Virus record (IMG/VR): IMGVR_UViG_3300032562_000003
Coordinates: 124,001-188,000 of that record
DNA: 64,000 bases
Reading direction: 5' to 3' (one strand)
Shown: piece after piece, positions 158 through 41,100 of the stretch
Position numbering within the stretch: the stretch's first letter is position 1
Layout: each line of letters begins with the position of its first letter
Program-made: the position numbers and the translations under genes
The notes under the pieces: generated by a model
What the model saw: only the letters and a program-made list of their open reading frames with translations
Told to the model about the DNA's origin: nothing
The model's database searches: none

Positions 158-736
158 TTACCTAGTGCGCTCATAACCAGTCACTGGATCAGTTATAACA
201 ATAGTTTTCCCACGCATCATGATATTACCTAAATGCATATCCATATTTACCTTAGGTAACGTAGCGATAAGATCACACGCTTCAGTTATACCAGGCTGCG
301 TCTGTTCTAAGACATACATAGCTTGAATATCACGCTCCAGATTGGCCGGCCAGCTTAGCAGCTTAGCACTATGCCATATATAACTCTCTAGCACACTCAC
401 CATATCGTACATGTCTCTAGTTCTAACTACAGGACTGAGCTTTTCCATTCGAATTGCGTTATAGTTATCATTGACTCTCATGAATGACCCACGAAACTTC
501 GGAAAATGCGGATTAGGATTGGACATGCACATTCTAACATATCTCGCATACGCTCTATCATCTGAGCTAACCAACTTTAATACGTAGGATTTGTCTTTTC
601 TCCACCAAACGTTAGCATACAACCCATGACCTAATTTTTGATATCCTGCTTTTTCTAGAATATCCTCAGCCGTCCGCTGATCGGGACGTGTTACTTCTGT
701 TAACTCTGATTCATTTAGGAGTTCTTGAATCTTCAT
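158..736 (-). CDS. protein kinase-like, resembling the T7 gp0.7 catalytic domain
   Basis: Gly-rich loop KLGHGLYANVW, beta3 Lys in YVLK, catalytic loop DMHLGNIM and ITDPV. These match motifs recalled for the T7 0.7 kinase (DMHSGNIM...ITDPV). Confidence 0.75.
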   Translation of the reverse strand: MKIQELLNESELTEVTRPDQRTAEDILEKAGYQKLGHGLYANVWWRKDKSYVLKLVSSDDRAYARYVRMCMSNPNPHFPKFRGSFMRVNDNYNAIRMEKLSPVVRTRDMYDMVSVLESYIWHSAKLLSWPANLERDIQAMYVLEQTQPGITEACDLIATLPKVNMDMHLGNIMMRGKTIVITDPVTGYERTR

Positions 737-1335: not shown

Positions 1336-1848
1336 TCATAACCCTGTGATTCTAGGATCACGGGCGGCGCCATATATCGGTTTATTGTTTCGAGACGGAC
1401 TTTTTATATTTGATTTCTTTGATATTCGGTACCTAATTTTTCTCAATGCTCTATCCAGTCGTTGGCGTATTCCTTCGCGGTTTATACCAAGCTTTTCTCC
1501 TATCTGCTCTAGAGACATTTCAGGGACTCCGATACCAAAAGCCATTCTAGCTAGGCGTTCTTCCAATGGATCTAGATCAAGCAAAATAGAATTGACTATT
1601 TTACGAACATCAGCAGCTTGGATGGCTGCGTTAGGATCTTCTTCAGAATCTGGAGTATTATAAGCTTTGTGTATTAGCGTAGTAATCTCTTGTGGATCGT
1701 CTACTATTTCCATTGGTTCTGGTAGTTGCGGTCCCTTACCAGAGAAAAAAGACCGTTGAAAGTTTGTGGGACCAAGCTTGCTGTCATCGTCAGGATTGTT
1801 GTTCTCATTGATTATGTCAATGTATGTTCTGAAAAGGTCTGCGCTCAT
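1336..1848 (-). CDS. stand-alone sigma70 region-4-like HTH protein
   Basis: LDPLEERLARMAFGIGVPEMSLEQIGEKLGINREGIRQRLDRALRKIR matches the RpoD region 4 pattern. No region 2 is present. Confidence 0.75.
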   Translation of the reverse strand: MSADLFRTYIDIINENNNPDDDSKLGPTNFQRSFFSGKGPQLPEPMEIVDDPQEITTLIHKAYNTPDSEEDPNAAIQAADVRKIVNSILLDLDPLEERLARMAFGIGVPEMSLEQIGEKLGINREGIRQRLDRALRKIRYRISKKSNIKSPSRNNKPIYGAARDPRITGL

Positions 1849-1866
1849 GAATAACCCCGTTTTAGT

Positions 1867-1874
1867 TATTTATC
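1867..1874 (-). promoter_or_regulatory. late promoter GATAAATA
   Basis: Variant of the T4 late promoter TATAAATA, 18 nt upstream of the 1848 start. The same octamer recurs before many late genes in the window. Confidence 0.7.
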
Positions 1875-1899
1875 GGTGTTTGCAGTTATCACCGTACAA

Positions 1900-2457
1900 T
1901 TAATCAACATACGGTAAATATGATTCCATCACAAAACCATTTCCACTAAACATTGGCCAAGCTGAGAAGTCTCCGGTATTCTCTAGTATGAGGCGCCAAT
2001 CTGTTGGATTAAAATAACTATAATAATCATCTAATGTATCTAACGAGAACGGTTCTTTCTTATTAGTTTTGACATTATACCAATACTTGTCAAATCTACT
2101 CAATCCTTTAACTACTTCCTGCATCATTTTAGAATGTACTTGCCCTATCATTAACGGTGAACGGTTCAGCCTAGTTTTAAAAAACCATAACATCATGGAT
2201 AAAAGTTTATTACCCCTGTGTTCAGGACTGACATAAACATCATCGATGATGTTATCATTATCAGATAGTGAGCAACAAGCAATTAGGGTTGTATCATTCC
2301 ACATAGAATAATAAATTCCGTCTTGTAAAACCTTATAGTTTTCTATGTCGGCTATATGCTTTCCGTGTTTATACCAATGATCTTTGTTCTTGTTTGCAAA
2401 TTGTTCTGCTTGTAGCGAAAGATCCGGACCTTTCATGGTCATTTCAGAAATTTTCAT
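1900..2457 (-). CDS. GNAT-family acetyltransferase-like protein
   Basis: Motif-A-like DDVYVSPEHRGNKL. Start moved from track position 2562 to ATG 2457 (MKISEM...), which removes the overlap with the HNH gene and matches the neighbouring MKIxE starts. Confidence 0.55.
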   Translation of the reverse strand: MKISEMTMKGPDLSLQAEQFANKNKDHWYKHGKHIADIENYKVLQDGIYYSMWNDTTLIACCSLSDNDNIIDDVYVSPEHRGNKLLSMMLWFFKTRLNRSPLMIGQVHSKMMQEVVKGLSRFDKYWYNVKTNKKEPFSLDTLDDYYSYFNPTDWRLILENTGDFSAWPMFSGNGFVMESYLPYVD

Positions 2458-2503: not shown

Positions 2504-3283
2504 TTACACGTCTTTCTGTTTACAGTTATCACCGTGCCAACGAGAATAGTTACTGGGACCAAAAGTTTTATGACAATGTGGGCAAATTTTCTTTAAGTCT
2601 TCTCTGTTATTAGGATTATTTTTTGAGAACTCTTCTTTCATCCTAACAGCAACTTTATCACCGAATCCTTCTGGTTTAGATACACCTTTTTGCTTTATTG
2701 AACGTTTTATCTTTTGTTCTTCGCTCATTGGTCCCTTAGGTTTTCCCTTGAGTGCTAAACTTTGTTTCAATTTGGTTTCTTCAGAGCGTTTTTGTCCAGT
2801 TACTTTAGCGATTCTTTTTAACTGTCCTTCAGCCTGTTTAACAGGATCTATCTTTCTGTTGCGTGTTCTTTCTCTATGTTTTTCTAACTCTTCACCTTCA
2901 AGTTTTTGACCTTTGTTCCAAGCTGGTTTACCTTTCATTCTTTCTGAATGAGTTTTTGCGTGTGCTATCCGATGTTTTTCATATGCTCTAGTTATGATAC
3001 GTGAGTGGTATCTTTGCTGAAACTCATTTTCAGCGTTCATCCCATTAAACGCATATGACATCTTGACGCGGTCTTCTCCTTCAGTCATCTTTAACAATGC
3101 CCAATGACAAAGTGCGTGTTCTCTTCCTGTTAGCCACACCTTATTATCTTTATCATCATTGCCTCCCATTGAACTAGGAATAATATGATGTCGTTCTTTG
3201 TATTGCCCTTTTGGCAATGTACGATTTTTTGCTTTCTCAATAAGGAGCATGTAGTGTTTAGTATATTTATTTTCTTTGAACAT
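2504..3283 (-). mobile_element. free-standing HNH homing endonuclease with NUMOD3-like repeats
   Basis: HHIIPSSMGGNDDKDNKVWLTGREHALCH HNH core; Lys-rich GKPAWNKG, KRSEETK and PMSEEQK segments; C-terminal CPHC...WHGDNC. Confidence 0.85.
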
Positions 3284-3312
3284 AATATCACCTTTCAGTA
3301 ATATTATTTATC
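3284..3312 (-). promoter_or_regulatory. late promoter overlapping an RBS-sequestering hairpin
   Basis: Minus strand reads GATAAAT-AATATTACT-GAAA-GGTGATATT-ATG: a 9-bp stem (2 G-U pairs) with a GAAA tetraloop that buries the SD AAGGTG. Confidence 0.7.
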
Positions 3313-3333
3313 ATAACGGAATAAAAAGCAATA

Positions 3334-3361
3334 GAAAAGGGGACATTTCTGTCCCCTTTTC
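3334..3361 (-). terminator. Rho-independent terminator after the major capsid gene
   Basis: Perfect inverted repeat gaaaaggggaca-tttc-tgtccccttttc, with a GAAA loop and U-tract on the minus strand. Confidence 0.85.
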
Positions 3362-3402
3362 CACCTTGTATAACTTTCTAACAGTTATCACTGTAACGTG
3401 AT

Positions 3403-4599
3403 CTATTGGAATGTTAAATTTTGGACCGCAATTTCGCCAACGTAGTCAGCCGCATTACCAAACGAACTCGCGGTATTCGTCAATTCGATGTAGCCATATC
3501 TGGTCATGAATGAAACGACTGGCTCGAAAGTAGTCGGATCAAGAACGACGCCAGATGACATCAACGGAATGTATGGGCAGTAGAATGCTGCTGCGTCAGT
3601 TTCCGAAGAACCCTTGTAGCCTACGAGTACTGGCTGAGTGTCTGGAGCATAGCTGTTAACGAAAACGCGCATTGCACCGTTCAAAGTACCAACGAACTTA
3701 GTGTTAGTTGGGGCTTCGAAAGTACCTTCAGTAGTACGTGCGAAAGCTGAAGTAGTTGCTGACTGAAGAACAGTCAAGGAAGCTGGAGATACAACAGCCC
3801 AGTTACCTGCACCACGACGAGTGCGTTGTGCGATCAAGTTAGCAACACGGTTGATGAGTACTGCAAGAGCAGCGTGTTCGTCACCAACGTAAGTAGCTGT
3901 ACCTGATACAGTTGCTTGGTTGTAAGTATATTCAGTTGACGCAAGAGTTGCGAGTGAGAGCAAGATTTCTTGGTCGATTTCAGCAGTGATTTCTTGTGCA
4001 AGTGCTGCCATGATTTCTGCTTCAACGTCAATCCCGTGTTGTGATTGTGCGTCTTGTGCAGCTTCGAAAGTCCAGCGAGCTTGTAGCTTACGTGACTTTG
4101 CTTCAACAGCTTGTCTCAAGATTTGTACTGAGATTTGCTTTCCGCCATTACCTTCTAGAGAAGCAGTGTCGGCACCAGTGTAGTAGCTAGTGGAGGTTGC
4201 ATCATTAGGAACGCGAGAATAGGCTTGCGCGATCTTGAATGGTGAAAGTGCTTCTTCACCAGCAGTTACAGAAGTTGCTGCTGCTGAGTTGTCAGTCAAG
4301 CTATTTGCATAGCGAACACGAAGGGTGTGAATCTGACCGACTGGGCCGGTCATTGGTTGCACGCCAACAAGTTCGTTAGCAATAACAGTAGGCATAACAC
4401 GTCGAATTACTGGAAGAATAACGCGATTTAGAGTTGCGATATTACCAGCAGTTGTAGTGCCAGCTGAAGATTCAGCAAGAAGCTGCTTCTTCGTATTTTC
4501 AAACAATACGTTCATAGTTGAACGACGATTGCCTTTTAAGCCTTCAAGCAGGGCGCTTTTAGTTTCGTCCCAACGGCTTTCTAAGAGTACTTTTGACAT
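3403..4599 (-). CDS. gp23: major capsid protein (T4 gp23-like)
   Basis: LPVIRRVMPTVIANELVGVQPMTGPVGQIHTLR, AKSRKLQARWTFEAAQD, EITAEIDQEI, FYCPYIPL, TRYG; strong SD aggag. Confidence 0.97.
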   Translation of the reverse strand: MSKVLLESRWDETKSALLEGLKGNRRSTMNVLFENTKKQLLAESSAGTTTAGNIATLNRVILPVIRRVMPTVIANELVGVQPMTGPVGQIHTLRVRYANSLTDNSAAATSVTAGEEALSPFKIAQAYSRVPNDATSTSYYTGADTASLEGNGGKQISVQILRQAVEAKSRKLQARWTFEAAQDAQSQHGIDVEAEIMAALAQEITAEIDQEILLSLATLASTEYTYNQATVSGTATYVGDEHAALAVLINRVANLIAQRTRRGAGNWAVVSPASLTVLQSATTSAFARTTEGTFEAPTNTKFVGTLNGAMRVFVNSYAPDTQPVLVGYKGSSETDAAAFYCPYIPLMSSGVVLDPTTFEPVVSFMTRYGYIELTNTASSFGNAADYVGEIAVQNLTFQ

Positions 4600-4627: not shown

Positions 4628-5719
4628 TTAAAGCCCTGCCAGACGCTTGATGTCGATTACATTGTCTGTTTCAGACATATCGACTTCTTGTACTGTATTG
4701 GCAGTTTTATTACCAGTTGCTTCTACAATAACAGACTTAGAAGGCTTAGCTTCTGAACCTGTATTAAGAACGGCTGGCAAATACTTATCGAATGCGTTCT
4801 GTAGCTTTGCTGTTTGAACGCTTTCTAGTAAAGTCTTCATCACTTGAGCCTTTTCAGCGTTGAGACTTGACAATAGATTACCCATTACCTTCTCACGTTG
4901 ATTTGATTCTTTAATGATACGGACTTCACGATCCTTTGATTCTACTAACTTAGTTGCTTGTGCAAGCTTAGCTGTAGCTTCTGAGAGTTGACGGTCTTTG
5001 GCTGCAAGTGCCTTCATTACTTTACGATTTTCAGCCTTATCATTGAGATAAGTTACTGAGAATTCGCTAGCGAATGATTCGAAAATCTTGCGGCCGAAGC
5101 TGTTTTCTCTAGCAGATTTGATGTCTTCTTTAAGTTGTGATAGTTCACCCTTAAGTTGATTTCCAACAAGACCGCTAACCTTCTTAGCGCTTTCGGCAAT
5201 AAACTTTGCCTTGAGTGCTTCAAGTTGCTTGCGACCTTCTGCAACGAGCTTGACCTTAGCTTCTACTACTGCTTGTCTATCAACAGCGAATTCTTTGATT
5301 TCTCTTGATAGGGCGTGAACAATGAATTGTTCTAGCTTCTTTTGGTTTTCCATTTGAACCTTGCGATCAGCACGTAGTTCGCGGATTTCTTCGGCTAGCT
5401 TAGTAACCATGAAATCGTTGAACTTGGTTGCGTTTTCACGTAGTTTCAATTGAGACTTTACGCGGTCTTCGTTCATTGCTTGTCTTTCAGCGTTAAATTC
5501 TGCAATTTCTTCTGAAAGATTTTCTGTCATCATCTTATCTAGGGCTTCTACCATGACGTTACGATCATGCTCGTAACGTTGTGCAAATTCTTCATGAAGT
5601 TCTGCACGAACCTGAGCGCGAGCCTCAGTTAACTTAGATTCCCAGGCTTCGTTAAGTTCTCTGCCTACGTCTTCGTTAATGAGTCCACTTTCAAGTAATG
5701 GTTTGATAGCATCTAGCAT
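4628..5719 (-). CDS. gp22: prohead scaffold protein (gp22-like)
   Basis: Acidic coiled-coil protein between the protease and the capsid gene, with many L/I-x-E sites. Confidence 0.85.
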   Translation of the reverse strand: MLDAIKPLLESGLINEDVGRELNEAWESKLTEARAQVRAELHEEFAQRYEHDRNVMVEALDKMMTENLSEEIAEFNAERQAMNEDRVKSQLKLRENATKFNDFMVTKLAEEIRELRADRKVQMENQKKLEQFIVHALSREIKEFAVDRQAVVEAKVKLVAEGRKQLEALKAKFIAESAKKVSGLVGNQLKGELSQLKEDIKSARENSFGRKIFESFASEFSVTYLNDKAENRKVMKALAAKDRQLSEATAKLAQATKLVESKDREVRIIKESNQREKVMGNLLSSLNAEKAQVMKTLLESVQTAKLQNAFDKYLPAVLNTGSEAKPSKSVIVEATGNKTANTVQEVDMSETDNVIDIKRLAGL

Positions 5720-5735: not shown

Positions 5736-6374
5736 TTATAACTTTAGATCATTGATGAGGCGTTTTACTTCCTCAGCCAAGTATCTTTGGACTTGTTTGT
5801 TGCCTTGAGCGTCTTTAGCAATCTCTAATACTTTATGTCCGTACTTCATGTTCTGAAGACCTTCATAAATTGCCTTAGGATATGCATTCGGAGCACTCGG
5901 TTGAGCAACGATATCTACAGTGATTATTTCAAAGTCACTGACTCGACCATCCATATCGTTAACGTTGCCGCTACCTCTACTGGACACACCGAGCTTCACT
6001 CCTGATTCCAACATTGTTCTTACGAGTTGACCCATTGGAGTAGGAAGAATCTTTAGTTTACCATAACCGTTTGGTCCGTCCATATACATATGAGTGATCA
6101 TATGAGAGACACGGTCTAGGTTTATTTTTAGATCGTCTGGGTGATCGACTTCACCAAGCACCGAGTAACCCTCGTGTATTTGCTTGTTGAGAGTATCTAC
6201 CGCAGTTTCAATTTCGTTGACGGGGTAAATACGCTCATTTGCGTTCTTAATTCCGCCCATGATGAAAATACCTTTCATGTAGAGCGTCTTAAGATCGGTG
6301 CCCTCATCCTTGACTGATTCGACCACCATACTAGCGCGATCAAAGGTCAAATTTTCTCTTAAATATAGAGCCAT
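5736..6374 (-). CDS. gp21: prohead protease (gp21-like)
   Basis: GIKNANERIY, LGEVDHP, LDRVSH, GVSSRGSG, DIVAQPSAPNAY. Start set at ATG 6374 (MALYLRE) behind the SD aagaggtg. Confidence 0.95.
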   Translation of the reverse strand: MALYLRENLTFDRASMVVESVKDEGTDLKTLYMKGIFIMGGIKNANERIYPVNEIETAVDTLNKQIHEGYSVLGEVDHPDDLKINLDRVSHMITHMYMDGPNGYGKLKILPTPMGQLVRTMLESGVKLGVSSRGSGNVNDMDGRVSDFEIITVDIVAQPSAPNAYPKAIYEGLQNMKYGHKVLEIAKDAQGNKQVQRYLAEEVKRLINDLKL

Positions 6375-6514
6375 TATAACACCTCTTTTGGTTTGCATTC
6401 AGAAGCGGGTTGTGGACTCACATACCTACCGTAAAGTGGCACGTGAGTCCAACCATAGAGATTCGGGACTGATTTTACGTTTGCCCGATTCTCACTTCTG
6501 ATGTACAAAGCCAT
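6374..6514 (-). other. 46-codon uORF inside a structured leader of gp21, with a duplicated gp21 start
   Basis: ATG 6514 gives MALYIRSEN...PKEVL, and its stop overlaps the gp21 start as TAATG. The region pairs into a three-way junction (see findings). Confidence 0.55.
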
Positions 6515-8577: not shown

Positions 8578-9418
8578 ATGACTATTTATCTATACAAGAA
8601 AACCCATAACATAACTGGATTAAAATACTTAGGTAAAACCGCACAATCTAATCCATATAAGTATCCAGGATCCGGAAAAATGTAGAGGTCGCATATAAAA
8701 ACACATGGGTATGATGTTACTACTGAAATATTACGAGAGTGTCACTCTAAAGAAGAGGTAGCAGAATGGGGTTATACTACTCTAAACTGTGGAATATAGT
8801 AGACGAGCGGGATAAGAATGGGAAGAAAACGTGGGCTAATCTAAAGTTTGAAGAGGGCGACGGAGGTGCAACTGTTTTTGGTGACAGCCATCATTCTAAA
8901 ACTATTGAATTTAAAAATAGAATTGATCACGCATGGACTCCCGAAAAAAGAAAAAAACAAGGTGATCTGTCTCGATCACGATTTTCGCACATGTCTACTG
9001 AAGACAAAAAACATATAAGAAAAAAAGCAATCGACACTAGAACTAAAAATAACCCAGATTGGAGGAAAGACTTATCTGATAGAATGTTAGGGAAAACAAT
9101 CCTTCAAAATCTAAAGAAGTAATAGAAAAGATAGCAGAAAGTAAATCAAACTGGAATGACTCCTTTCGAGAATATGTAATCAGTAAAAATTCTGGAATTA
9201 ATCATTACAGAAACAACCCTAATTACAAATCAACTCAATTTGGAAAGGGGCACCCTAATTATAACCCCAATGTATACTCATTTAAAAATAAAAATACACT
9301 AGAAGAAGTTAGAATGACAGTGTTTGATTTTATAAAAACATACAACCTACATCAAGGAAATGTAAGTTTATTAATGTCTGGAAAAAGAAAATCTGTACGC
9401 GGGTGGATGTTATCTTAG
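8578..9418 (+). pseudogene. decayed GIY-YIG (Seg-like) homing endonuclease
   Basis: Starts MTIYLYKKTHNITGLKYLGKT, nearly identical to 17975..18682. TAG at 8683-8685 replaces the conserved Trp. Two 1-nt losses in G runs (8768-8771, 9090-9092). The third frame ends ...GNVSLLMSGKRKSVRGWMLS*. Confidence 0.85.
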
Positions 9419-12400
9419 AAGCCGCCGCCCGGAGTTGCTCCAGGTCCGCCCATTGCTGATGGTTCTGCTGCTACATCGCCGCCTGAAACTGGCCCAGCAG
9501 TTTCCGGTGCTTCACCTTCCTGTTCGGAATTCTCAATCTGATCCGCAGTATTCATATCAGCATCAAAGTCTCCGCTGGATACACCTATGTTTCTAAGATC
9601 AGCACCCTGTGGTTCGCTAGTGACTTCTTCTCTGTTTTCTTCTTCCCAGAGCTTTTCGTTCTTCTTGATTTCTTCTTCTGAAAGACCTAAGAATCTTTCA
9701 AGGTTGAAGCGCTTTGACATGTATGGAATAGCATCCATAGCAGAGAACACTGATACTCGTGCATTATCTAACTCACTCTGACGGTAGGCTGCAAAGTTTT
9801 GCGGAGGATTAAAAGTTAGTTGGAAAAGACTAGTATCAATATTGAAGCCTCTCCAACGCAAGAATAACTTAAACTCTTCATCCAGCTTCAAGCAGATATA
9901 ATTCTGAAGTCTTTCACAGTATTGATTGAATCTAAATTCTTGAATCATCGCTGTGCCGACACGACCATCGTTCATGGGTGTAGTATTGTCGTCGGGACCA
10001 GTTGGTAAGTATGAAGACGGAACACGAAGTCCACGGGCAAGACGATTATTGAAGTACTTCAAGTCATCGATTTCACCTAGATTTTGTCCGCCCGGCAGAA
10101 CTTCAACAGATGATCCACGTCCTTCTGCTGTTACAGGGAAGAAATAGTCTTCGTTCATTGAGTTCTTTACAAATATACCAGCGTCGATAGCAAACGTATG
10201 ATAATCATGCCATTGATGACGCCCATCAATAGTTATAGTTCCAGTGTCTCTGTTACTTACCTTTTCAATCTTTACAATTCTATGGTTAAAATTGTCAATT
10301 TCTTTTACAAAATGTTTCCAATTTTTATATCCAAATTTAGAAAGAAGTCTGTCTAACTTACTGTACCCAAACTTATTAAAGTCTATTTTACATTGTGCAT
10401 TTTTATAATCCAATGGTGATGAATTAGCATTCTTAACCAAACTCAATAAGGTGCTATCATTATCACACCACTCCAGTACCTTATTTTTATTTTTATTACC
10501 TTGCTTAACCTGTTCTGCTACTCGTTGTACCATATCAAATGTCAAGATCAGTGGTTGATTTTTAATTTTAACTCTCTTTTCACAATTTGCACGAACTTTT
10601 TCCAAACCAACTGGATTACGATCAAAGTACTCTTTGCGCACTTGTTGCATACTAGATTTATATTTAGCCGCAGTTATAGGATCGTTCTTTCTAGCCCATA
10701 CAGCTTTTTGTTGCGCTGCTCTAATGTTCCAAAGACCGATTAGACGTTCTTCTTCGGTCATATTTTCCCAATTTTCTTTTAGAGTGGCCGAAGTTTTAGA
10801 CGTTATCTGCTTTCTATATTCATCTGACATCGTTTCCCAAAATTCTTTTTTCTGTGCAGCATGATATAAAACATGATCTGTTTTGTTCATGAATACTAGG
10901 TTTTTGGGTTCGTTATTAAATCTATTGTTATCTTTATGATGAATAACTGTTCTAGGTGCCATTGCGTATTCAGTTAGATAATTAAATTCTTGGTGCTTTC
11001 CTAAATTTCTAAAGAAATCCCCGACCATCCGATGAGTCCAAATCCATTTTTTACTCTCATGGTCCCATACCTGCTGGTAATCATTGGTTTTTCCGCCTGA
11101 AATATTTTTATTTTGAGTATTGAACGCAATTAGACTATCATTTTCAGTTAAATGTTGTGCTTCTACAAAGCCTTTATCAAACACAGGTATTTTATGGTCT
11201 GGTGTACAAACTAATGTTTTGCCGTTATCAAAAGTAAGTTTAATTACTTCTGTGTTTTTTCTAGTAATGCCAGCCCAATTAATTACTCCAGGTACTACTC
11301 TACCGGTTACTGGATCGCAGCTATACGCCCAATTTTCTTTTCCAGCTTCAAATTCAGTGATTATTTCTTGTAAAGACAAGGTTCTTCCATCTAAAAGTGG
11401 AATTTTAGTTTCTAAATCCAAACATAAAGGGTTATAAGAGGCGTCCACAATCGACTGTCCACCGTACGGTGAGGGAATTCTACGCTGGTGAATTTCGTTC
11501 TTTACTCGCTCAACAAATGCCATTGCTAAGTGACTTGGCATGTTACCAACATCGATCTTAAACATTCTACGTTCAGGTGCACGCTGCACACGATAGATAA
11601 GAACCGCATCTTCTAGTAGTTCTTTTTGCTTATAGACCTTAAAGATGTTTTCCAGTATAGATTGACCAAAAGGCCAAAATCTATCTAATCCTTCAGTTAA
11701 GGACAAGTGTACAATATGCTTACTGTCTACTGCTGATTCACTCTGACCTAATGTAAAACGACTTCCAGTCGTATTATATGGCATTGCCGGAACAGTGTAC
11801 GGGGTGTTAGTTCCGCCGCCACTACCACCTAAACCAGTTGCTGGGTTCGCAGCAAAGTCAGTATTGGTTTTCTGTGCTACTGATAAGTTTTGTAGATTGA
11901 TATTGATGTCTTTGATGACATACTGTTCCGGCTTCTTGCCCTCAGATTCGTTGACGATAACCTTAATGACCTTAACCATATCAACCCAGTATAGCTTAAA
12001 GTTTTCTGGGTCACGAACAAATACTTGGTCACCATACTTGACAACGTTTCTGAAAATCTTAAACATTCTCACGTCGAATTCATTTAGCTTGCACCACTGT
12101 TGTAGCTGCTTACCTAGCAATTCTACTTCACGTGGCGTAGGTTCTCCTTTGAATTCAAACGCAAACGGTGTCTTGTTATGTTCATTTCGCTGTGTAGAGA
12201 ACTCTGCTATGATGTCCAAACAAGCGTTGATTTCAGCATCAACGTCCATCATTTCGTATTGATTGTATCGTTCGATTCTGTTGGGGTGACCAGTGTAGAC
12301 TTCCGGTAGTCTACTTTGATAGTTTTTGTATCCAAATTCAGTATTGTTCCAACCACCAGTTGGCATACCGTTTTGTCCAGGCGACCCATTCCATGCTCCG

Positions 12401-12474
12401 GCATTACTGCTCGCACCAGAGATAGGACTCGAAACACCACTCTTGTTTAGAAATTTCTTCTTGTATCCAGACAT
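9415..12474 (-). CDS. gp20: portal protein (gp20-like) containing an intein
   Basis: RYNQYEMMDVDAEINACLD, LLEDAVLIYRVQRAPERRMFKIDVGNMP, EDYFFP, VEVLPGGQNLGEIDDLKYF, RGLRVPSSYL. Confidence 0.96.
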   Translation of the reverse strand: MSGYKKKFLNKSGVSSPISGASSNAGAWNGSPGQNGMPTGGWNNTEFGYKNYQSRLPEVYTGHPNRIERYNQYEMMDVDAEINACLDIIAEFSTQRNEHNKTPFAFEFKGEPTPREVELLGKQLQQWCKLNEFDVRMFKIFRNVVKYGDQVFVRDPENFKLYWVDMVKVIKVIVNESEGKKPEQYVIKDININLQNLSVAQKTNTDFAANPATGLGGSGGGTNTPYTVPAMPYNTTGSRFTLGQSESAVDSKHIVHLSLTEGLDRFWPFGQSILENIFKVYKQKELLEDAVLIYRVQRAPERRMFKIDVGNMPSHLAMAFVERVKNEIHQRRIPSPYGGQSIVDASYNPLCLDLETKIPLLDGRTLSLQEIITEFEAGKENWAYSCDPVTGRVVPGVINWAGITRKNTEVIKLTFDNGKTLVCTPDHKIPVFDKGFVEAQHLTENDSLIAFNTQNKNISGGKTNDYQQVWDHESKKWIWTHRMVGDFFRNLGKHQEFNYLTEYAMAPRTVIHHKDNNRFNNEPKNLVFMNKTDHVLYHAAQKKEFWETMSDEYRKQITSKTSATLKENWENMTEEERLIGLWNIRAAQQKAVWARKNDPITAAKYKSSMQQVRKEYFDRNPVGLEKVRANCEKRVKIKNQPLILTFDMVQRVAEQVKQGNKNKNKVLEWCDNDSTLLSLVKNANSSPLDYKNAQCKIDFNKFGYSKLDRLLSKFGYKNWKHFVKEIDNFNHRIVKIEKVSNRDTGTITIDGRHQWHDYHTFAIDAGIFVKNSMNEDYFFPVTAEGRGSSVEVLPGGQNLGEIDDLKYFNNRLARGLRVPSSYLPTGPDDNTTPMNDGRVGTAMIQEFRFNQYCERLQNYICLKLDEEFKLFLRWRGFNIDTSLFQLTFNPPQNFAAYRQSELDNARVSVFSAMDAIPYMSKRFNLERFLGLSEEEIKKNEKLWEEENREEVTSEPQGADLRNIGVSSGDFDADMNTADQIENSEQEGEAPETAGPVSGGDVAAEPSAMGGPGATPGGGF
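10162..11424 (-). mobile_element. intein (421 aa, residues 351-771) with an HNH endonuclease domain
   Basis: Begins CLDLETKIPLLDG and ends HTFAIDAGIFVKN followed by Ser. Contains block B LVCTPDHKIPV and internal HNH VIHHKDNNRFNNEPKNL...H. Removing it restores contiguous YNPL|SMNEDYFFP. Confidence 0.92.
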
Positions 12475-35155: not shown

Positions 35156-38100
35156 ATGGCCCGAATTCGGACAATAACTTTTCTTCCTGAGATTTTTCAA
35201 ACCTCAACTAACGCGGAATTTTTGTCAGCGACCCTAGATCAGATCGTAAATCCACCGAATACGATGAAGATTCAAGGCTATGTAGGTAGCAAGTTTGGAT
35301 ATGGTGTAAATGCAACTGACAATTATGTAGTTGAACCAACAAAAACTCGGGTGAACTATCAGTTAGATCCGGGTGTAGTTTTTACTAAGCCAAACGAATC
35401 TGTAGCAAACGACTTTATCTCGTATCCAGGCATCATCGACTCTATTGCAATGCAAGATAGTATTACGGATAACAACAGTCGTCTATTCAAAAGTCAGTTT
35501 TATTCATGGGACTCCTTCACTAACCTCGACAAGCTCATTAACTTTAATGAATATTACTGGTTGCCAGTCGGGCCGCCGGCTGTTACTATCTCAGCAGCAA
35601 CCGTGTACTCTACTGAAAATTATGCAGTCACATCACTACCTAATGGATATGAAATTGCTCTAGTCGGACAACCTATCGGTAGCATCAATCCTACACTTGG
35701 ATTGATCCGCGGAGGAACCTATACTTTTGCTGTAAATCAATCGTCTCAGTTTTGGATTCAGACGGATCCGGGTACCTCAGGATATTCGCCATTCCAATCG
35801 AATCTTACTACTAGACAAGTATACGGAGTAGACAACAATGGCGCAAGTCAAGGTGTTGTTACGTTTACTGTTCCGCAAAAAAATGCACAAGATCAATATA
35901 TTTTTCCAGGTAACAACACTGTCGATCTAGTCAGCACTAAATTGTTTGACCAAGTAAATGGAGCAGTTTTAAAGACATTTACTGACACGGATGGCGTAAC
36001 ATATCAAGGACTTAATGACATTGATGGCGTGACTGCGCTTGAAGGGTTACGCATCATGTTCTATTATGATGGTATTCCGGCAGAGAAGGGAAACACAGAG
36101 ACCTTCTTGAGCGAGACACCGCTGGACATCAATAGTGATGTTCTCGTCGCACCAATCGTTATAAATGTAACTAGCTGTGATGCTTCTGCGTTTACTACAG
36201 ATAGTACCTCTCAATTAGTAGTCGGTCAAACTGTAACCTTTAACAACCCAACATTCGGTGGAGTTACTGCAGGGGAAGTCTATTATGTTCATAGTATTCC
36301 TACTTCAGGTACATTTACTATCGCGTTGACTCTAGATGCTTCGTCTCCGTTAACTTTGGTTCCTGGATCAGGTACTATGGTTGCCAATATCAATCAGGGT
36401 CTATATGAAGAAAGTGTCGCATCAACGGTGTTTGAATACTATTACTTGATTGAATACATCGGTGATCCAAAGAACCCAACTATTCGTTTAGTTCCAGATG
36501 GTACTATTCCTGTAAATCAAACAATTACTCCATTATATGGTACTCAATGGAACAATATACCATTTTATCGTTCACCTACCGGAGTAATTAATCCAATTCC
36601 TGTTATCACTGCTCCGTTAGATGTTCTATATTATCAAGACGGTACATCTGCTGATTCTGTCGGCGTGATTAAAATCATTGACAGCAATACTACAAATACT
36701 ATTAATGTTGTGACTGAAATCTTGGGTAACCCTAATTATACGTCATCTAGTGGAGTAGTATTTACTAATGGATTGAAAGTTAACTTTCAAGGTGACATTA
36801 TTCCTACAAGTTATTTACAGGGACAATACTATGTACAGGGTGTAGGAACTGCAATTGAGTTAGTTCCAGTAAGCTCTCTAGTCTGTACTGAAGATTTTAC
36901 ACATGGTAATTACATTCCATATGATTCTACACCATATGACATTAGCAATTACGATTCGGACCTTTTTATTCCAACAGATAAAGACTATATTACTATTGCT
37001 AGAAACGCAATCAATAAAAATGCTTGGTCCAGAAGCAATCGTTGGTTCCACATCGATGTCATCAACGCAACTGCAAAATACAATAACGACCCTAATATCG
37101 CAACTACTTACGCGACACAAGCAAACAAAGCAGTCCGCCCTATAATCGAGTTTTATCCTAATCTAAAATTATACAATTCGGGTTCTGTAGGCGCCGCAGG
37201 AATCGATTTTATCGATACCCATAACACTGATGCATTGTCAACAGTAGCAGGATCTTACAATTATTACCCAGATACAGAAGTACTTACTACAGCATCGGCG
37301 TCGGTTGTAGGAGTAACCGCCGCAACATCAACTACCTTTAGTGTAGACGCTGCTAACGTTTCGGGTACATTCCAAATTGGAATGTATGTTGCAGATTCTT
37401 CAAGCATTCTTCCTAATAATACACAAATTACCGACATTACTGGTACTACTACGCTAACTGTAACAGTTTCATGGCCCGGCGCAAAAAACATATCCTCTGC
37501 TTCAAACTTGTCTATTGTGGGTTCAGACACTACTTTAGATAACTATGCTTTGTTTCCGGAAGCAAGAATCGTATTTGCTGCTGACTCTAGCTCTACTGTA
37601 AGAAACAAAATCTATGTCGTAAACTTCTCGGTAATTGATCCTAATACTAGACCTGTAATTACACTCACGGTAGCAGAAGACGGAAATATTGTCCCTGATG
37701 AACAATTAGCAATTAAGCGTGGTTATTATCACCAAGGCACTAGTTACTATTATGATGGTATAAAGTGGATACAGGCACAACAAAAGGTTACGGTTAACCA
37801 ACCACCGCTGTTTGACGTTTTTGATGCCAACGGTATTTCTTTTGGGGATTCTTCGGTCTATCAAAGTACTTCGTTCAAGGGGTGTAAACTTTTCGCATAC
37901 AGTGTTGGTAGCGGAGTCAATGACCCTATATTAGGCTTTCCAATCGCATATTCTGGTATAGATAACGTAGGGGATATTAGTTTCGACGTATCACTGAATT
38001 TGGATACATTTAATTATGTGTCTGGATATAATCCTATTAATCAAAAGGTAAATACTGGCTACGTATATAATTATACATCAGGTACATCATATGTAAGACA

Positions 38101-41100
38101 GCTTGGTTGGCAAACCGCAATTGCTGATAGCACGCAATATCAATTATTCAGTTTTGACTTTGATCCTACAAATCCAACATTAAGTTTCCAGTGTGACGTT
38201 GCAGCATTGCCTGCTTTAGCAACGGGAGAAACTGGTTGGCCGAGAGTTAAGGTATACATCAACAATGTATATCAAGCACCAACATCATATGCTACGGTAG
38301 TTGGTACCAATACTACCACAATTACATTTAACAGTAGCAGTTCACTACCAACAACTAGCACGGTAGTTCAAGTATTAGTATTGAGTGATCAAGTAAGCCA
38401 AATCGGTTACTACGACATTCCTATTAATTTAAATAATAATCCATTAAATGCTGATTTAACTACAGCCAATGTTGGTGATATCCGTGCACAGTATAGAGAC
38501 ATTTTTATTAATTCACCAAACACGACAGGTGAAATTTTCGGCGCAAATAATTTTAGAGATTGCGGTAACTTAGTACCATATGGTACAGAGATAATTCAAA
38601 ACTCTGCGTCATTAGTACTGCCGGGAACCTTTTTCCGAAACACGCAGCACAACTTGTTTGACGCATTGATGTTTAACAGCCGTGAATATATAAAGTATAA
38701 ACAATTACTAGTATATACGGTACAAAACACAGATTACGTTCAGCGATACACTCCGTCGCAAATTCTGGATAGCGCACTAGACCAGATTACTGCTGCAAAG
38801 AGCGAAATCAACGCATTCTTTTGGTCGGACATGTTACCGTCAAAGGCTCCGTACCGCACCAACACGTACACGTTCAATAATCAACTGGATACTTCTGTTT
38901 ATCCATTAAGCAATGTTTATAATTTTGAAACTGCTAACTATAGCGGCGTTCTTGTTTATGTGTTGAGAACAGTCGCTGGTGTAGTAGTTGAACGACAACT
39001 TACTAGTGGCATAGATTATATAATAAGTCCGGATGCCCCTTCGCTCACTATCATTAGCCCGCTTGGTGATGGCGATAAGGTCATCATTAAAGAATACAAC
39101 CAAACATACGGCTCATATATTCCTAATACACCAACTAAGTTGGGACTATATCCTTCATTTTATCCAGAAGTAGTTTTGGATTCAGATTACACAGTTCCTA
39201 CTTACTTCATCAAAGGACATGACGGATCGTTCACTAAGTTATACGGTGACTATGACGAAACATTAGGAGTATTGATTGATTTCAGAGACCAGGCTCTGCT
39301 TGAGTTTGAACTAAGAATTTACAATAATTTAAAATTAAGCACAACTGTTCCTATCGAGCGATACGAAGTTGTACCTGGTTACTTCAGAAGTTCTACATCA
39401 ACATATTCATGGAATGAATTTATACAGATGTACGAACCTACGTTCTTGAACTGGATTGGTCAAAATCGTCTCGATTATAAGTCCCAGTACTATCAAAAGA
39501 ACAACGAGTTCAGTTATAACTATACAAATTCAGGTAATAAACTAGACCAAGCTGCTATTCAGCAAGGTTATTGGAGAGGGGTCTATGAATATTTCTATGA
39601 CACAACTACTCCAAACGAAACTCCATGGGAGATGTTAGGATTTGCTAATGAACCAACCTGGTGGGCTGATCGTTACGGACCTACTCCTTATACGAGCGAT
39701 AACGGTATTCTATGGGGTGATTTAGAAGCTGGTTATATTTGGAATAACGGTAATCCCTACACCGTACCTGAGTTAGCACGTCCTGGACTATCTAAAATTA
39801 TTCCGGTTGACTCCAACGGCGATTTGTTGTCTCCGCTAATCGCAATTGTAGGCAACTATAATCCAAGTACGTTCCAAAAAGATTGGGTAGTAGGAGATGA
39901 TGCACCTGTGGAGTTGAGCTATCGACGTAGTTCAACTTGGCCATTTGATTTAATGAGACTATTTGCACTGACTAGACCAGCTGAATTTTTCAATTTGGCC
40001 GTCGACCTTGACAATTACAAATACAATGCTGAATTTAATCAATATTTGGTTAATGACAGAAGCCATTTAGTTCCTGCAAATATTGAAATTTATGGTAATG
40101 GTACTGCAAAAACCAGCTACATTAACTGGATTGTAGATTATGAAAAGCAACAAGGGGTTGACGCAACTACTAACATTACAACCCTTTTGAATAACCTTGA
40201 TGTTCGTCTGGTTTATCGTCTTGCTGGATACAGTGACAAAACATTGCTTCAATTCTATGTGGAAAAGGGTTCGCCTAATAGCAATAACGCAACACTATTG
40301 ATTCCTAACGAAAGTTATTCAGTGTTGTTATATGACAATCAGCCCTTCGATCAGATTATGTTCAGTGGCGTGGTCATTCAGAAAAATCAAGGCTATTGGA
40401 CTGTATACGGTAATTCACAAACATTTGCATACTTTAAAACACTAAAACCTATCAATAACGGTACATACGGTAGTGTTGACGTTTTAGGTACTACAGTTAA
40501 GTATGCTAAAAACTATACTGATCAAGTAGTTCTTGTTCCATACGGTACCAAATTCTACAGCACTCAGGGAGTAGTTCAATTCCTAATGAGCTATGGTGCC
40601 GAACTTGAAAGCCAGGGCATGTTGTTCAATGAAGTTGAACAAGGAATTGAAGTCACTTGGGCACAGATGGCAGCAGAATTCTTGTATTGGTCAATGTCCG
40701 GATGGGAAGTAGGAAGTCTGATAACACTAAATCCGTCTGCTACTGCAATAAACATTGATAGACCAAGCGCGATAGTTCAGCCGCTTACGGTTCAGCAAAC
40801 TAACTTTATACTAAATCAAAATCTCTATCCGATACAACTAAATGATCTTTGCGTTGAACGTGACGATACATTATTCCATGCGCACACCTTGAATCAGGGT
40901 GATTCTATGTCTTATGCTCAATTTAACGTAAGTAATTTCGAGCATGGTATCGTATTCGATAATGTCACTTTGTTTAATGATATTATCTATAATCTAACTA
41001 CTGGACTAAGACAAAACCGCATCTACGCTCGCGGGGTCAAGACTGCTGATTGGAACGGAACCGTAAACGCCTGGGGCTTCATTTTAAATCAAGACAACGT

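What the first reader, a model, noticed from the sequence alone, without database searches (positions are those of the whole stretch)
158..736. T7 gp0.7-like protein kinase in a T4-like head operon
SEEN: LGHGLYA...VLK...AYARY...PKF...DMHLGNIM...ITDPV. KNOWN (from recall): the T7 0.7 kinase has DMHSGNIM and ITDPV and is an early gene that phosphorylates many host proteins; related podophage kinases are reported to blunt defence systems. INFERENCE: this is a compact catalytic domain without T7's C-terminal shut-off domain, placed under late control with a capsid-targeting-like N-terminus. That suggests delivery from the virion rather than early synthesis.
Basis: partly seen in the sequence, partly recalled or inferred. 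Interest (0 to 1): 0.7.

Follow-up and report, generated by a model that had tools for sequence, protein, structure and literature searches.

The report
Capsid-tagged T7-type kinase, jumbo phage
A freshwater jumbo phage encodes a minimal T7-type protein kinase that sits just after the capsid gene and begins with a short tag like the one phage T4 uses to load proteins into its head, so the enzyme is probably injected ready-made with the DNA, although this has not been shown.

Summary
All catalytic residues are invariant and there is no shut-off domain.

The host genome is a lake-water jumbo phage (259 kb record, about 73% complete) with T4-type head genes. It is not a T4 phage.

The kinase is not in the capsid operon. 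A strong terminator follows the capsid gene. The nearest promoter-like site is a T4-late-like GATAAATAA upstream of a sigma-r4-like / methyltransferase / kinase unit.

The "capsid-targeting-like" N-terminus holds up better than expected:
- At least 11 unrelated-looking proteins of this genome start M[KR]xxE[FL]x(1-2)E (expected 0.04). The same pattern in T4 finds ipII, ipIII and Alt.
- The tag ends in the [L/I]xE site of the T4-type prohead protease, which this phage encodes.
- In relatives the capsid protein is 95-96% identical, but the kinases are only 40-49% identical and occur in one to three copies, inside a variable island of tagged genes.
- Homologues are fused to ART-PolyVal and Acb1.

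Virion delivery is a well-supported inference, not a demonstration. No proteome exists for this clade.

The parts
158..736 (-). CDS of the 192-aa minimal T7-type protein kinase
   Evidence: ORF. PHROG 15752 E 1.3e-13. hhalign to T7 gp0.7 98.3%. AF2 pLDDT 90.4 with a kinase fold.
710..736 (-). Codons 1-9, MKIQELLNE: an N-terminal tag like the T4 capsid-targeting sequence, ending in an L-x-E protease-type site
   Evidence: pLDDT 47 over residues 1-10. Absent from many homologues, whose alignments begin at query residue 11-12. The same pattern heads at least 11 proteins of the genome, P about 4e-24. T4 ipII/ipIII start MKTYQEFIAE and Alt starts MELITELFDE.
623..631 (-). Gly-rich loop G36-H-G38; G38 aligns with T7 G76
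   Evidence: G36 and G38 are nearly invariant in A1. Alignment to T7. T7 G76F is catalytically dead (PMC13645617).
575..577 (-). Invariant ATP-binding lysine K54 (VLK)
   Evidence: Invariant in 45 homologues.
224..241 (-). Catalytic loop D166-M-H-L-G-N171
   Evidence: D166 and N171 are invariant. The loop aligns with T7 DMHSGN.
182..190 (-). DPV motif (D183-P-V), the DFG equivalent; the protein ends 7 residues later
   Evidence: D183 and P184 are invariant in A1, and V185 is invariant in the close set A3. DPV is the T7K signature (PMC13645617).
739..1320 (-). 193-aa SAM-dependent methyltransferase with the same tag (MKIQELFE). Its stop codon lies 2 nt before the kinase ATG.
   Evidence: Methyltransf_23 E 4.2e-07. 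Tag. One homologue is fused to ART-PolyVal and only 3 of 95 homologues carry the tag.
1336..1848 (-). 170-aa protein with a sigma-70 region 4 domain; first gene of the putative sigma-r4 / methyltransferase / kinase unit
   Evidence: Sigma70_r4 E 7.5e-10.
1866..1874 (-). GATAAATAA, a T4-late-like promoter motif ending 18 nt before the sigma-r4-like ATG
   Evidence: The NATAAATA motif family is 17-29x enriched in upstream intergenic DNA. Site list. Sequence.
1900..2457 (-). 185-aa GNAT acetyltransferase, starting MKISEM (tag-like but without the x-E site)
   Evidence: Acetyltransf_1 E 6.2e-05. Conserved in relatives L076, L084 and L081.
2504..3283 (-). HNH/NUMOD3 homing endonuclease cassette with its own GATAAATAA motif (3304-3312)
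   Evidence: PHROG 655 E 2.5e-46. Motif. Metagenome contigs break at both ends of the cassette.
3330..3365 (-). Intrinsic terminator (16-pair stem plus T run) directly after the capsid gene
   Evidence: Metatranscriptome contigs cover only 3424-4457.
3403..4599 (-). Major capsid protein, gp23 type. It has four L-x-E sites in its first 43 residues.
   Evidence: PF07068 E 1.7e-97. N-terminal sequence.
4628..5719 (-). Scaffolding protein
   Evidence: PHROG 10922 E 1.7e-80. The gene in the equivalent position in MIJ3 and 121Q/G17 is annotated as scaffolding protein.
5736..6398 (-). Prohead core protease (T4 gp21 type, Peptidase_S77), the presumed tag-cleaving enzyme
   Evidence: PF03420 E 2.5e-25. 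Match to T4 gp21, E 3.6e-16.

Best explanation
The gene encodes an active, minimal Ser/Thr/Tyr protein kinase of the T7 gp0.7 (T7K) family: N-lobe, hinge, three helices, catalytic loop and DPV, and nothing after that.

Unlike T7's early kinase, it is made with the structural genes. It is transcribed from a T4-late-like ATAAATA promoter as the last enzyme of a sigma-r4-like / methyltransferase / kinase unit, which lies between the capsid gene and the tail-fibre genes.

Its first 9 residues (MKIQELLNE) are proposed to act as a portable capsid-targeting tag of the T4 kind. In this model:
1. The tag takes the protein into the scaffolding core of the prohead.
2. The gp21-type prohead protease removes the tag after the L-N-E glutamate.
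3. The mature basic kinase stays in the head.
4. It enters the cell with the DNA and phosphorylates host proteins, plausibly defence and nucleic-acid-handling proteins as T7K does, before any phage gene is expressed.

The same tag is proposed to load about a dozen other proteins of this phage, including a second kinase, the neighbouring methyltransferase and a 756-aa GH19 muramidase protein.

Shown: family membership, intact catalytic residues, the recurrent tag, gene order, hypervariability and domain fusions.
Inferred: late timing, packaging, cleavage, injection and targets.
For: Kinase identity
- PHROG 15752 E 1.3e-13.
- hhalign to T7 gp0.7 98.3%.
- K54, E98, D166, N171 and D183 are invariant in 45 homologues.
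- The model has pLDDT 90.4 and a kinase fold.

The tag
- 11 of 325 predicted proteins start M[KR]xxE[FLIM]x(1-2)E, against 0.04 expected (P about 4e-24). Only 2 of 1539 internal Met residues show the pattern.
- After the first 12 residues are removed, the 14 tag-like proteins fall into 10 BLAST groups.
- The codons of the tag differ synonymously between genes, so selection acts on the peptide.
- The same regex in T4 returns ipII, ipIII, alt and one extra ORF. In G17 and PA5oct it returns one ORF each.
- The T4 capsid-targeting sequence is MKTYQEFIAE, and any protein fused to it is packaged. Alt is cut at ITE-6.
- The tag has pLDDT 47 and is missing from many homologues.
- In fusion proteins the tag sits at the extreme N-terminus whatever domain follows.

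Protease
- An S77 protease is present.
- The capsid propeptide has four L-x-E sites.

Timing and position
- The ATAAATA motif is 17-29x enriched upstream of genes. It precedes the tail-fibre genes and the kinase unit.
- Apart from one site at each edge, there is no sigma-70-type promoter in the 105-146 kb structural block.
- There is a weak gp55-like hit.
- In 5 of 5 close metagenomic relatives and 10 of 12 IMG/VR loci, the kinase lies 1.3-4.7 kb downstream of the capsid gene.

Arms-race signature
- The capsid protein is 95-96% identical, but the kinases are 40-49% identical, occur in 1-3 tandem copies, and the island content varies.

Counter-defence and injection links
- Homologues are fused to Acb1 (anti-CBASS) and to ART-PolyVal, and some start ELFED like T4 Alt.
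- 60 of 101 homologues of the tagged GH19 protein carry the tag-like start, including polyvalent-type fusions.
- T7K disarms defences by promiscuous phosphorylation (PMC13645617).
Against: - There is no virion proteome, no N-terminal sequencing and no time-resolved transcription for this phage or its clade.
- The nearest isolates with proteomes do not help. PA5oct/MIJ3 lack the kinase, and PA5oct lacks the tag repertoire. G17/121Q has a kinase without the tag, far from the head genes.
- Many family members without the 10-residue extension still begin M[RK]xxE[LI] fused directly to the conserved TRP segment. Part of the resemblance could therefore be a family-specific N-terminus.
- A 5'-nucleotidase also carries the tag, which is not an obvious cargo.
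- A terminator separates the kinase unit from the capsid gene. A lake metatranscriptome gave contigs only for the capsid gene.
- The ATAAATA motif is called 'late' only by analogy with T4 and by its position before structural genes.
- Protease-kinase co-folding gave no answer.
Confidence: 0.55

Rival explanations
1. The kinase is expressed late but is not packaged. It acts in the cytoplasm late in infection, for example on assembly, lysis timing or late-acting defences. The shared N-terminus would then be a lineage-specific N-terminal helix, or an expression or stability element, with no role in head targeting.
For: - The late-like promoter motif and the position in the structural block fit this explanation as well.
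- Short-form homologues begin M[RK]xxE[LI]TRP, so a similar start is intrinsic to the kinase domain.
- A nucleotidase carries the tag.
- There are no proteomic data.
Against: - The tag occurs on 10 BLAST-unrelated groups of proteins and always ends in the protease-type [L/I]xE.
- It is selected at the peptide level.
- It matches the experimentally defined T4 targeting sequence, and in T4 the same pattern picks out the known packaged proteins.
- It also heads GH19 and polyvalent-type proteins, which are expected to be ejected.
Confidence: 0.25
2. It is an ordinary T7K-like takeover or anti-defence kinase, synthesised early or in the middle period from a promoter not recognised here. Its position next to the capsid gene would be an accident of a mobile, homing-endonuclease-rich island.
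For: - T7 and G17 homologues lie among early-type genes.
- The island is polymorphic and flanked by repeats next to a homing endonuclease.
- A terminator isolates it from the capsid gene.
Against: - There is no TTGAC-N17-TAnnnT promoter in or near the island, whereas such sites cluster in regions of small genes elsewhere.
- The position after the capsid gene is conserved in 15 of 17 related loci despite 50-60% sequence divergence of the kinase.
- The tag is unexplained by this model.
Confidence: 0.12
3. It is not a protein kinase in practice. It would be either a small-molecule phosphotransferase (APH-like) or a catalytically silent structural or decoy protein.
For: The best PDB fold hits include aminoglycoside phosphotransferases at the same E-value range as protein kinases. 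The fold lacks the whole C-lobe after the DFG equivalent.
Against: - The nearest sequence and structure relatives are T7-type phage protein kinases, whose family has been shown to phosphorylate proteins.
- All catalytic residues, and the DPV motif linked to hyperactivity, are invariant.
Confidence: 0.05

Closest known systems
Phage T7 gp0.7 protein kinase (T7K; PHROG 2828/15752, PF27024)
   Same: - Homologous catalytic core: Gly-rich loop, VxK lysine, DMHxGN catalytic loop, ITDPV.
- The family is phage-restricted.
- T7K is a hyperpromiscuous kinase that disarms defence systems (PMC13645617).
   Different: - No C-terminal shut-off / DNA-binding domain.
- 192 aa against 359 aa.
- Carries an N-terminal T4-type tag.
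- Lies in the structural gene block behind a late-like promoter motif, not among class I early genes.
- About 24% identity over the aligned core.
Jumbophage T7K homologues (Escherichia phage G17/121Q G17_00108, Salmonella phage Munch) noted in PMC13645617
   Same: Stand-alone kinase domain without the shut-off domain, in Rak2-like jumbo phages. Function unknown.
   Different: - The G17 gene lies 115 kb from the capsid gene, among small genes.
- It starts MTKQEIF with no [L/I]xE tag.
- It has DPL rather than DPV.
- The G17 genome has no tag repertoire.
T4 internal proteins IPI-III and Alt (head-packaged, injected; capsid-targeting sequence cut by gp21)
   Same: - A 9-10 residue N-terminal tag of the same pattern (MKTYQEFIAE and MELITELFDE against MKIQELLNE and MRVTEFIAE), ending in [L/I]xE.
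- A T4-type prohead protease, scaffold and capsid protein are present.
- The cargo genes are hypervariable against a conserved head.
- Alt shows that an injected host-modifying enzyme is a real category.
   Different: - No sequence homology beyond the tag.
- The cargo here is enzymes (kinase, methyltransferase, muramidase) rather than small basic DNA-binding inhibitors.
- Packaging and cleavage are untested.
Polyvalent proteins of phages and conjugative elements (Iyer et al. 2017, PMC5512222), including their truncated kinase domains
   Same: - The idea that kinases, ARTs, GNATs, methyltransferases and lysozymes are delivered with the DNA.
- Homologues of this kinase are fused to ART-PolyVal and Acb1. 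Homologues of the tagged GH19 protein are multi-enzyme fusions.
   Different: - This protein is a single domain.
- The kinase clade described there (Verrucomicrobia/Bacteroidetes prophages, with other signature residues) is treated as distinct from T7K.
- A term search of that paper found no mention of an N-terminal leader.

Membership tests
T7 gp0.7-type protein kinase family (PF27024 / PHROG 15752, 2828) | Significant profile match to the family's kinase domain | tested here: met
   PHROG 15752 E 1.3e-13 and PHROG 2828 E 0.006. hhalign to T7 gp0.7 prob 98.3%, E 1.4e-14. Homologues carry PF27024. The local Pfam copy lacks that model and gave no hit.
T7 gp0.7-type protein kinase family (PF27024 / PHROG 15752, 2828) | Catalytic residues: Gly-rich loop, beta-3 Lys, catalytic Asp...Asn, metal-binding Asp in the DPV motif | tested here: met
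   G36/G38, K54, D166, N171 and D183-P184-V185 are invariant or nearly so. They align with the T7 residues, including G76.
T7 gp0.7-type protein kinase family (PF27024 / PHROG 15752, 2828) | Protein-kinase-like fold | tested here: met
   AF2 pLDDT 90.4. BFVD T7-like kinases at TM 0.6-0.7, E down to 1e-11. PDB APH and eukaryotic-type protein kinases at E 2e-5.
T7 gp0.7-type protein kinase family (PF27024 / PHROG 15752, 2828) | Phosphotransfer to proteins | not testable with these tools
   Needs an in vitro assay with a D166A control.
T7 gp0.7 orthologue (kinase plus shut-off domain, class I early gene) | C-terminal shut-off / DNA-binding domain | tested here: not met
   The protein ends at residue 192, 7 residues after DPV. 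The alignment covers T7 residues 65-218 only.
T7 gp0.7 orthologue (kinase plus shut-off domain, class I early gene) | Early-region position behind host-type promoters | tested here: not met
   It lies between the capsid and tail-fibre genes. There is no sigma-70-type site nearby, and the nearest motif is ATAAATA.
T4-type head-packaged proteins with a capsid-targeting sequence | N-terminal propeptide of 10-20 residues matching the targeting consensus | tested here: met
   MKIQELLNE against T4 MKTYQEFIAE and MELITELFDE. The same regex recovers T4 ipII, ipIII and alt. There is genome-wide enrichment, P about 4e-24.
T4-type head-packaged proteins with a capsid-targeting sequence | Cleavage site [L/I]-x-E at the end of the tag, and a gp21-type protease in the genome | tested here: met
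   L-N-E at residues 7-9. Peptidase_S77 at window 5736-6398. The motif is as reported for T4 (PMC5694885). Actual cleavage was not tested.
T4-type head-packaged proteins with a capsid-targeting sequence | Late expression together with the head proteins | tested here: inconclusive
   There is a late-like motif and a structural-block position. However, a terminator follows the capsid gene, and the only RNA data show capsid transcripts alone.
T4-type head-packaged proteins with a capsid-targeting sequence | Presence of the processed protein in virions and its entry into the cell | not testable with these tools
   No isolate or proteome exists for this clade. Related isolates lack the kinase or the tag.
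Polyvalent proteins (Iyer et al. 2017) | Two to fifteen effector domains in one polypeptide | tested here: not met
   This is a single domain of 192 aa. Only its homologues are fused: P0066 to Acb1, and P0165 and P0187 to ART-PolyVal.

The most novel reading that the evidence does not exclude
A lineage of abundant lake-water jumbo phages uses a portable 9-residue T4-like capsid-targeting tag. With it, the phage loads a fast-evolving arsenal of ready-made enzymes into the head: one to three T7-type kinases, a methyltransferase, ART-like proteins, a GH19 muramidase protein and others. A promiscuous kinase would then be injected as protein and could disarm host defences before any phage gene is transcribed. 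The capsid-to-tail-fibre island would be the functional counterpart of T4's hyperplastic internal-protein locus, and the tag would be a sequence signature for finding injected effectors in metagenomes.
Probability: 0.45. Interest if true: 0.8.

Novelty: new variant of a known kind. Interest (0 to 1): 0.65.

Why it matters
T7's kinase was recently shown to disarm many bacterial defence systems by mass phosphorylation. The same paper left the jumbo-phage homologues as "function to be elucidated".

If this homologue is pre-packaged and injected, it would act at time zero. That is the moment when restriction, retrons, CBASS and similar systems decide the outcome of infection. It would add kinases to the short list of enzymes known to be injected from phage heads, such as T4 Alt and the N4 and phiKZ RNA polymerases.

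The recurrent tag is also practically useful:
- It offers a simple sequence handle for predicting virion-delivered effectors in uncultured phages.
- It may be a ready-made tag for loading foreign proteins into non-T4 capsids.

The contrast between a 95%-identical capsid protein and 45%-identical kinases marks the island as an arms-race locus worth mining for anti-defence genes.

Tried and rejected
- Pfam-A (local copy) gave no family for the kinase. This is because PF27024 is newer than that copy, so it is not evidence against membership.
- A sequence search of the PDB gave only chance hits with E about 1.
- The exact T4 late promoter TATAAATA is not enriched in the window: 2 sites against 6 expected. 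Only the degenerate NATAAATA family, restricted to intergenic DNA, is enriched.
- Co-folding of the S77 protease with the kinase gave 'no answer' (score 0.00, controls not run). This counts neither for nor against binding.
- I looked for proteomic support in isolates:
  - MIJ3 (capsid protein 66% identical) and its sister isolate PA5oct: MIJ3 has no T7K homologue, and PA5oct has only one tag-like ORF.
  - G17/121Q have a kinase without the tag, elsewhere in the genome, and one tag-like ORF.
  - The phAPEC6 and RaK2 papers mention no such kinase in virions.
  - So no existing proteome bears on this clade.
- I considered that the shared N-terminus is a nucleotide-level element such as a translation signal. 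I rejected this because the codons differ synonymously between genes.
- I considered that the tagged genes are paralogues sharing an inherited N-terminus. I rejected this because they fall into 10 BLAST-unrelated groups.
- The search for related loci with the broad alignment A1 failed for lack of conserved stretches. It worked with the closer set A3.
- Metatranscriptome contigs covered only the capsid gene. This shows the presence of capsid RNA. It does not show the absence of kinase RNA.
Full report
**1. The observation**

Window 158-736 on the minus strand is one ATG-initiated ORF of 192 aa. Its ATG lies 2 nt after the stop codon of the upstream gene.

**2. Kinase identity**

- The local Pfam copy gave nothing. 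PHROGs gave the T7 0.7 kinase family, phrog_15752, at E 1.3e-13, with weaker hits to phrog_18305 and phrog_2828.
- A word-indexed search found 65 homologues, many carrying PF27024. A later context table names this family Phage_T7_kinase.
- An exhaustive HMMER search found 1628 representative clusters at E <= 1e-3.
- In an alignment of 45 homologues, K54, E98, D166, N171 and D183-P184 are invariant, and G36 and G38 are nearly so.
- A profile-profile comparison with T7 gp0.7, taken from the T7 record, gave 98.3% probability over T7 residues 65-218. The Gly-rich loop (G38 against T7 G76), VLK/VIK, DMHLGN/DMHSGN and ITDPV/ITDPV all align.
- The AF2 model is confident (pLDDT 90.4). Only the first 10 residues are poor, at pLDDT 47. 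The model matches T7-like phage kinases in BFVD, and APH and eukaryotic-type protein kinases in the PDB.
- The protein stops 7 residues after DPV. It has no shut-off domain and none of the canonical C-lobe beyond the DFG equivalent.
- The close clade keeps the full DPV motif. The 2026 T7K paper links this motif to hyperactivity and finds it degraded in the jumbophage homologues it examined (PMC13645617).

**3. The genome**

- The window is bases 124001-188000 of a 258,859-bp IMG/VR virus record. It has 40.6% G+C, and CheckV estimates it as 73% complete.
- The sequence is present in at least 19 lake-water and freshwater metagenome runs.
- The capsid protein is of the gp23 type. At the amino-acid level it is 66% identical to Pseudomonas phage MIJ3 (Wroclawvirus) and about 63% identical to the GAP32 and Asteriusvirus jumbo phages.
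- The phage is therefore a jumbo phage with T4-type head genes (portal, S77 protease, scaffold, gp23). It is not a T4-like phage.

**4. Gene order and transcription signals**

On the minus strand the order is: portal (with an intein), two small genes, protease, scaffold, capsid protein, terminator, HNH endonuclease, GNAT, sigma-70-region-4-like protein, methyltransferase, kinase, an 89-aa ORF, then three tail-fibre-like paralogues.

- A 16-pair stem with a T run follows the capsid gene. The kinase is therefore not simply part of the head operon.
- A k-mer survey of upstream intergenic DNA put the NATAAATA family at the top (17-29x enriched), followed by a Shine-Dalgarno word and GTTGACTT.
- ATAAATA sites precede the tail-fibre genes, many large structural-looking genes, the HNH gene and the sigma-r4-like gene. 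The last site is GATAAATAA, ending 18 nt before that gene's ATG.
- TTGAC-N17-20-TAnnnT sites cluster in regions of small genes at 2.7-14.5 kb and 30-55 kb. Apart from one site at each edge (104.9 and 146.9 kb), they are absent from the 105-146 kb structural block.
- A weak gp55-like match exists (E 1.1e-5).
- Late expression of the sigma-r4 / methyltransferase / kinase unit is thus a reasonable inference. It is not a measurement.
- The one metatranscriptome that holds this phage yielded contigs only over the capsid gene. They end near its stop codon. This fits the terminator and says nothing about timing.

**5. The N-terminal tag**

*Recurrence in this genome*
- The kinase, the methyltransferase and, more loosely, the GNAT all start MKI[QS]E.
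- With a slightly wider pattern, 11 of 325 predicted proteins in the genome begin M[KR]xxE[FLIM]x(1-2)E. The expectation is 0.04 (binomial P about 4e-24), and only 2 of 1539 internal methionines show the pattern. A twelfth case is hidden by my start-codon choice.
- The tagged proteins include:
  - a second T7K-family kinase of 373 aa;
  - a 756-aa protein with a GH19 lysozyme-like domain;
  - an NT5C nucleotidase;
  - several proteins of unknown function.

*Evidence that it is a portable peptide tag*
- After the first 12 residues are removed, the 14 tag-like proteins fall into 10 BLAST groups.
- The tag is encoded with different synonymous codons in different genes.
- In every strict case the tag ends in [L/I]-x-E.

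*Comparison with T4*
- From the T4 record itself, ipII and ipIII start MKTYQEFIAE and Alt starts MELITELFDE.
- The literature defines MKTYQEFIAE as the capsid-targeting sequence. It suffices to package foreign proteins and is then cut off once (bioRxiv 10.1101/2021.01.19.427310; PMC3012670).
- Alt is processed at ITE-6 (PMC5694885).
- As a positive control, the same regex on the whole T4 genome returned ipII, ipIII, alt and one small ORF of unknown function, gp61.1.
- As negative controls, G17 and PA5oct gave one ORF each.
- This phage's own capsid propeptide has four L-x-E sites in its first 43 residues.

**6. Modularity of the tag**

- Many kinase homologues align from query residue 11-12 to their own residue 2-3. 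They lack the first 10 residues.
- In fusion proteins the tag sits at the extreme N-terminus and the kinase domain starts internally without it. P0078 and P0098 are examples.
- Only 3 of 95 methyltransferase homologues carry the tag. The rest have other N-terminal extensions.
- A caveat: short-form kinases begin M[RK]xxE[LI]TRP. A similar start is therefore also intrinsic to the domain.

**7. Comparative context**

- In five metagenomic relatives, the kinase or kinases lie two to four genes after the capsid gene and before a conserved 80-94 aa ORF and the tail-fibre genes.
- In 10 of 12 IMG/VR loci the same is true.
- Across these loci the identities are:
  - capsid protein, 95-96%;
  - protease, 82-91%;
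  - kinases, only 40-49%.
- The kinases occur in one to three tandem copies.
- The island variably holds a GNAT, the sigma-r4-like gene, the methyltransferase and other tagged ORFs of 93, 98, 102, 150 and 552 aa.
- This is the pattern described for T4's internal-protein locus: conserved tag, hypervariable cargo (PMC3012670).

**8. Functional links**

- Homologues include P0066, a 1769-aa protein with three kinase domains and a C-terminal Acb1 anti-CBASS domain.
- P0187 and P0165 are ART-PolyVal-kinase fusions. P0165 starts MKMRELFEDE, close to Alt's N-terminus.
- One homologue sits beside ART-PolyVal and NUDIX genes.
- Of 101 homologues of the tagged GH19 protein, 60 start with the tag-like pattern. 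They include multi-enzyme fusions of the polyvalent type: GNAT+GH19+SET, deaminase+GH19 and GH19+amidoligase.
- Iyer et al. inferred that such proteins are packaged and injected. They discuss a different truncated kinase clade, and a term search of the paper found no N-terminal leader (PMC5512222).
- The mature kinase and the mature methyltransferase are both basic, with pI 8.8 and 8.9.

**9. What is known already**

- T7K is a hyperpromiscuous kinase that disarms defences. The same paper lists jumbophage homologues (G17, Munch) that lack the shut-off domain and states that their function is open.
- In G17 the homologue is 115 kb from the capsid gene, among small genes, and has no tag.
- My searches of the held library turned up no report of a T7-type kinase with a capsid-targeting tag.

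**10. Verdict**

- The kinase call is secure.
- The tag is real, recurrent and T4-like.
- The island is hypervariable and carries links to counter-defence.
- Packaging, cleavage, injection and late timing are inferred. No proteome or time course exists, and a co-fold of protease and kinase gave no answer.
- I put about 0.55 on the packaged-effector model. The main rival is a late but unpackaged kinase.

Noticed in passing
window 9415-12474 (-): The portal gene is 1019 aa because it carries an intein with an HNH endonuclease (two Portal_T4 stretches, Intein_splicing 359-740, HNH_3). A relative (L076) has a 1485-aa portal with the same kind of insert.
   Followed up: partly
window 1883-1892, 2523-2532, 3382-3391 (-): A repeat with core GTGATAACTG (about 13-20 nt alike) occurs three times against 0.17 expected: just after the capsid gene, at the 3' end of the HNH gene, and after the GNAT gene. 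Metagenome contigs break, with alternative loose ends, at 2520-2560 and 3351-3380. The HNH cassette therefore looks like a population polymorphism bounded by the repeats.
   Followed up: partly
G000 86204-96456 (outside the window, - strand): A cluster holds four tagged proteins in a row: 429 aa, the second T7K-type kinase of 373 aa, 345 aa, and the 756-aa GH19 protein. A Dps/ferritin-like gene sits among them. GH19 homologues elsewhere are also near ferritin genes.
   Followed up: partly
window 1336-1848 (-): A 170-aa protein consists of an acidic N-terminal part plus a sigma-70 region 4 domain. It is the first gene of the unit that ends with the kinase. It could be a host-RNA-polymerase mimic or decoy.
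   Followed up: no
window 35156-54049 (+): A single ORF of 6297 aa is preceded by a GATAAATAC motif. It was not analysed.
   Followed up: no
G000 1317, 25022, 26707, 79113, 106679 and others: In about 17 genes the ATAAATA motif ends only 3-8 nt before the ATG. If the motif is a -10 element, those late mRNAs would be leaderless or nearly so. Several tagged genes also lack a visible Shine-Dalgarno sequence.
   Followed up: no
protein P0330 (metagenomic homologue of the tagged GH19 protein): The tag MRAREFINE is followed directly by a twin-arginine signal (SRRNFLRGAG, PF10518). Removal of the tag in the head might therefore expose an export signal that works after injection.
   Followed up: no
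T4 record NC_000866 18966-19130 (-), gene 61.1: This 54-aa ORF of unknown function, next to the primase gene, starts MKTFKEFIKED. That is very close to the T4 capsid-targeting sequence.
   Followed up: no
proteins P0066, P0067, P0068: Metagenomic proteins of 813-1769 aa contain three to five tandem T7K-type kinase domains in one chain.
   Followed up: partly
window 3424-4457: A 2017 lake metatranscriptome contains contigs identical to the capsid gene, so the phage was actively infecting in that sample.
   Followed up: partly
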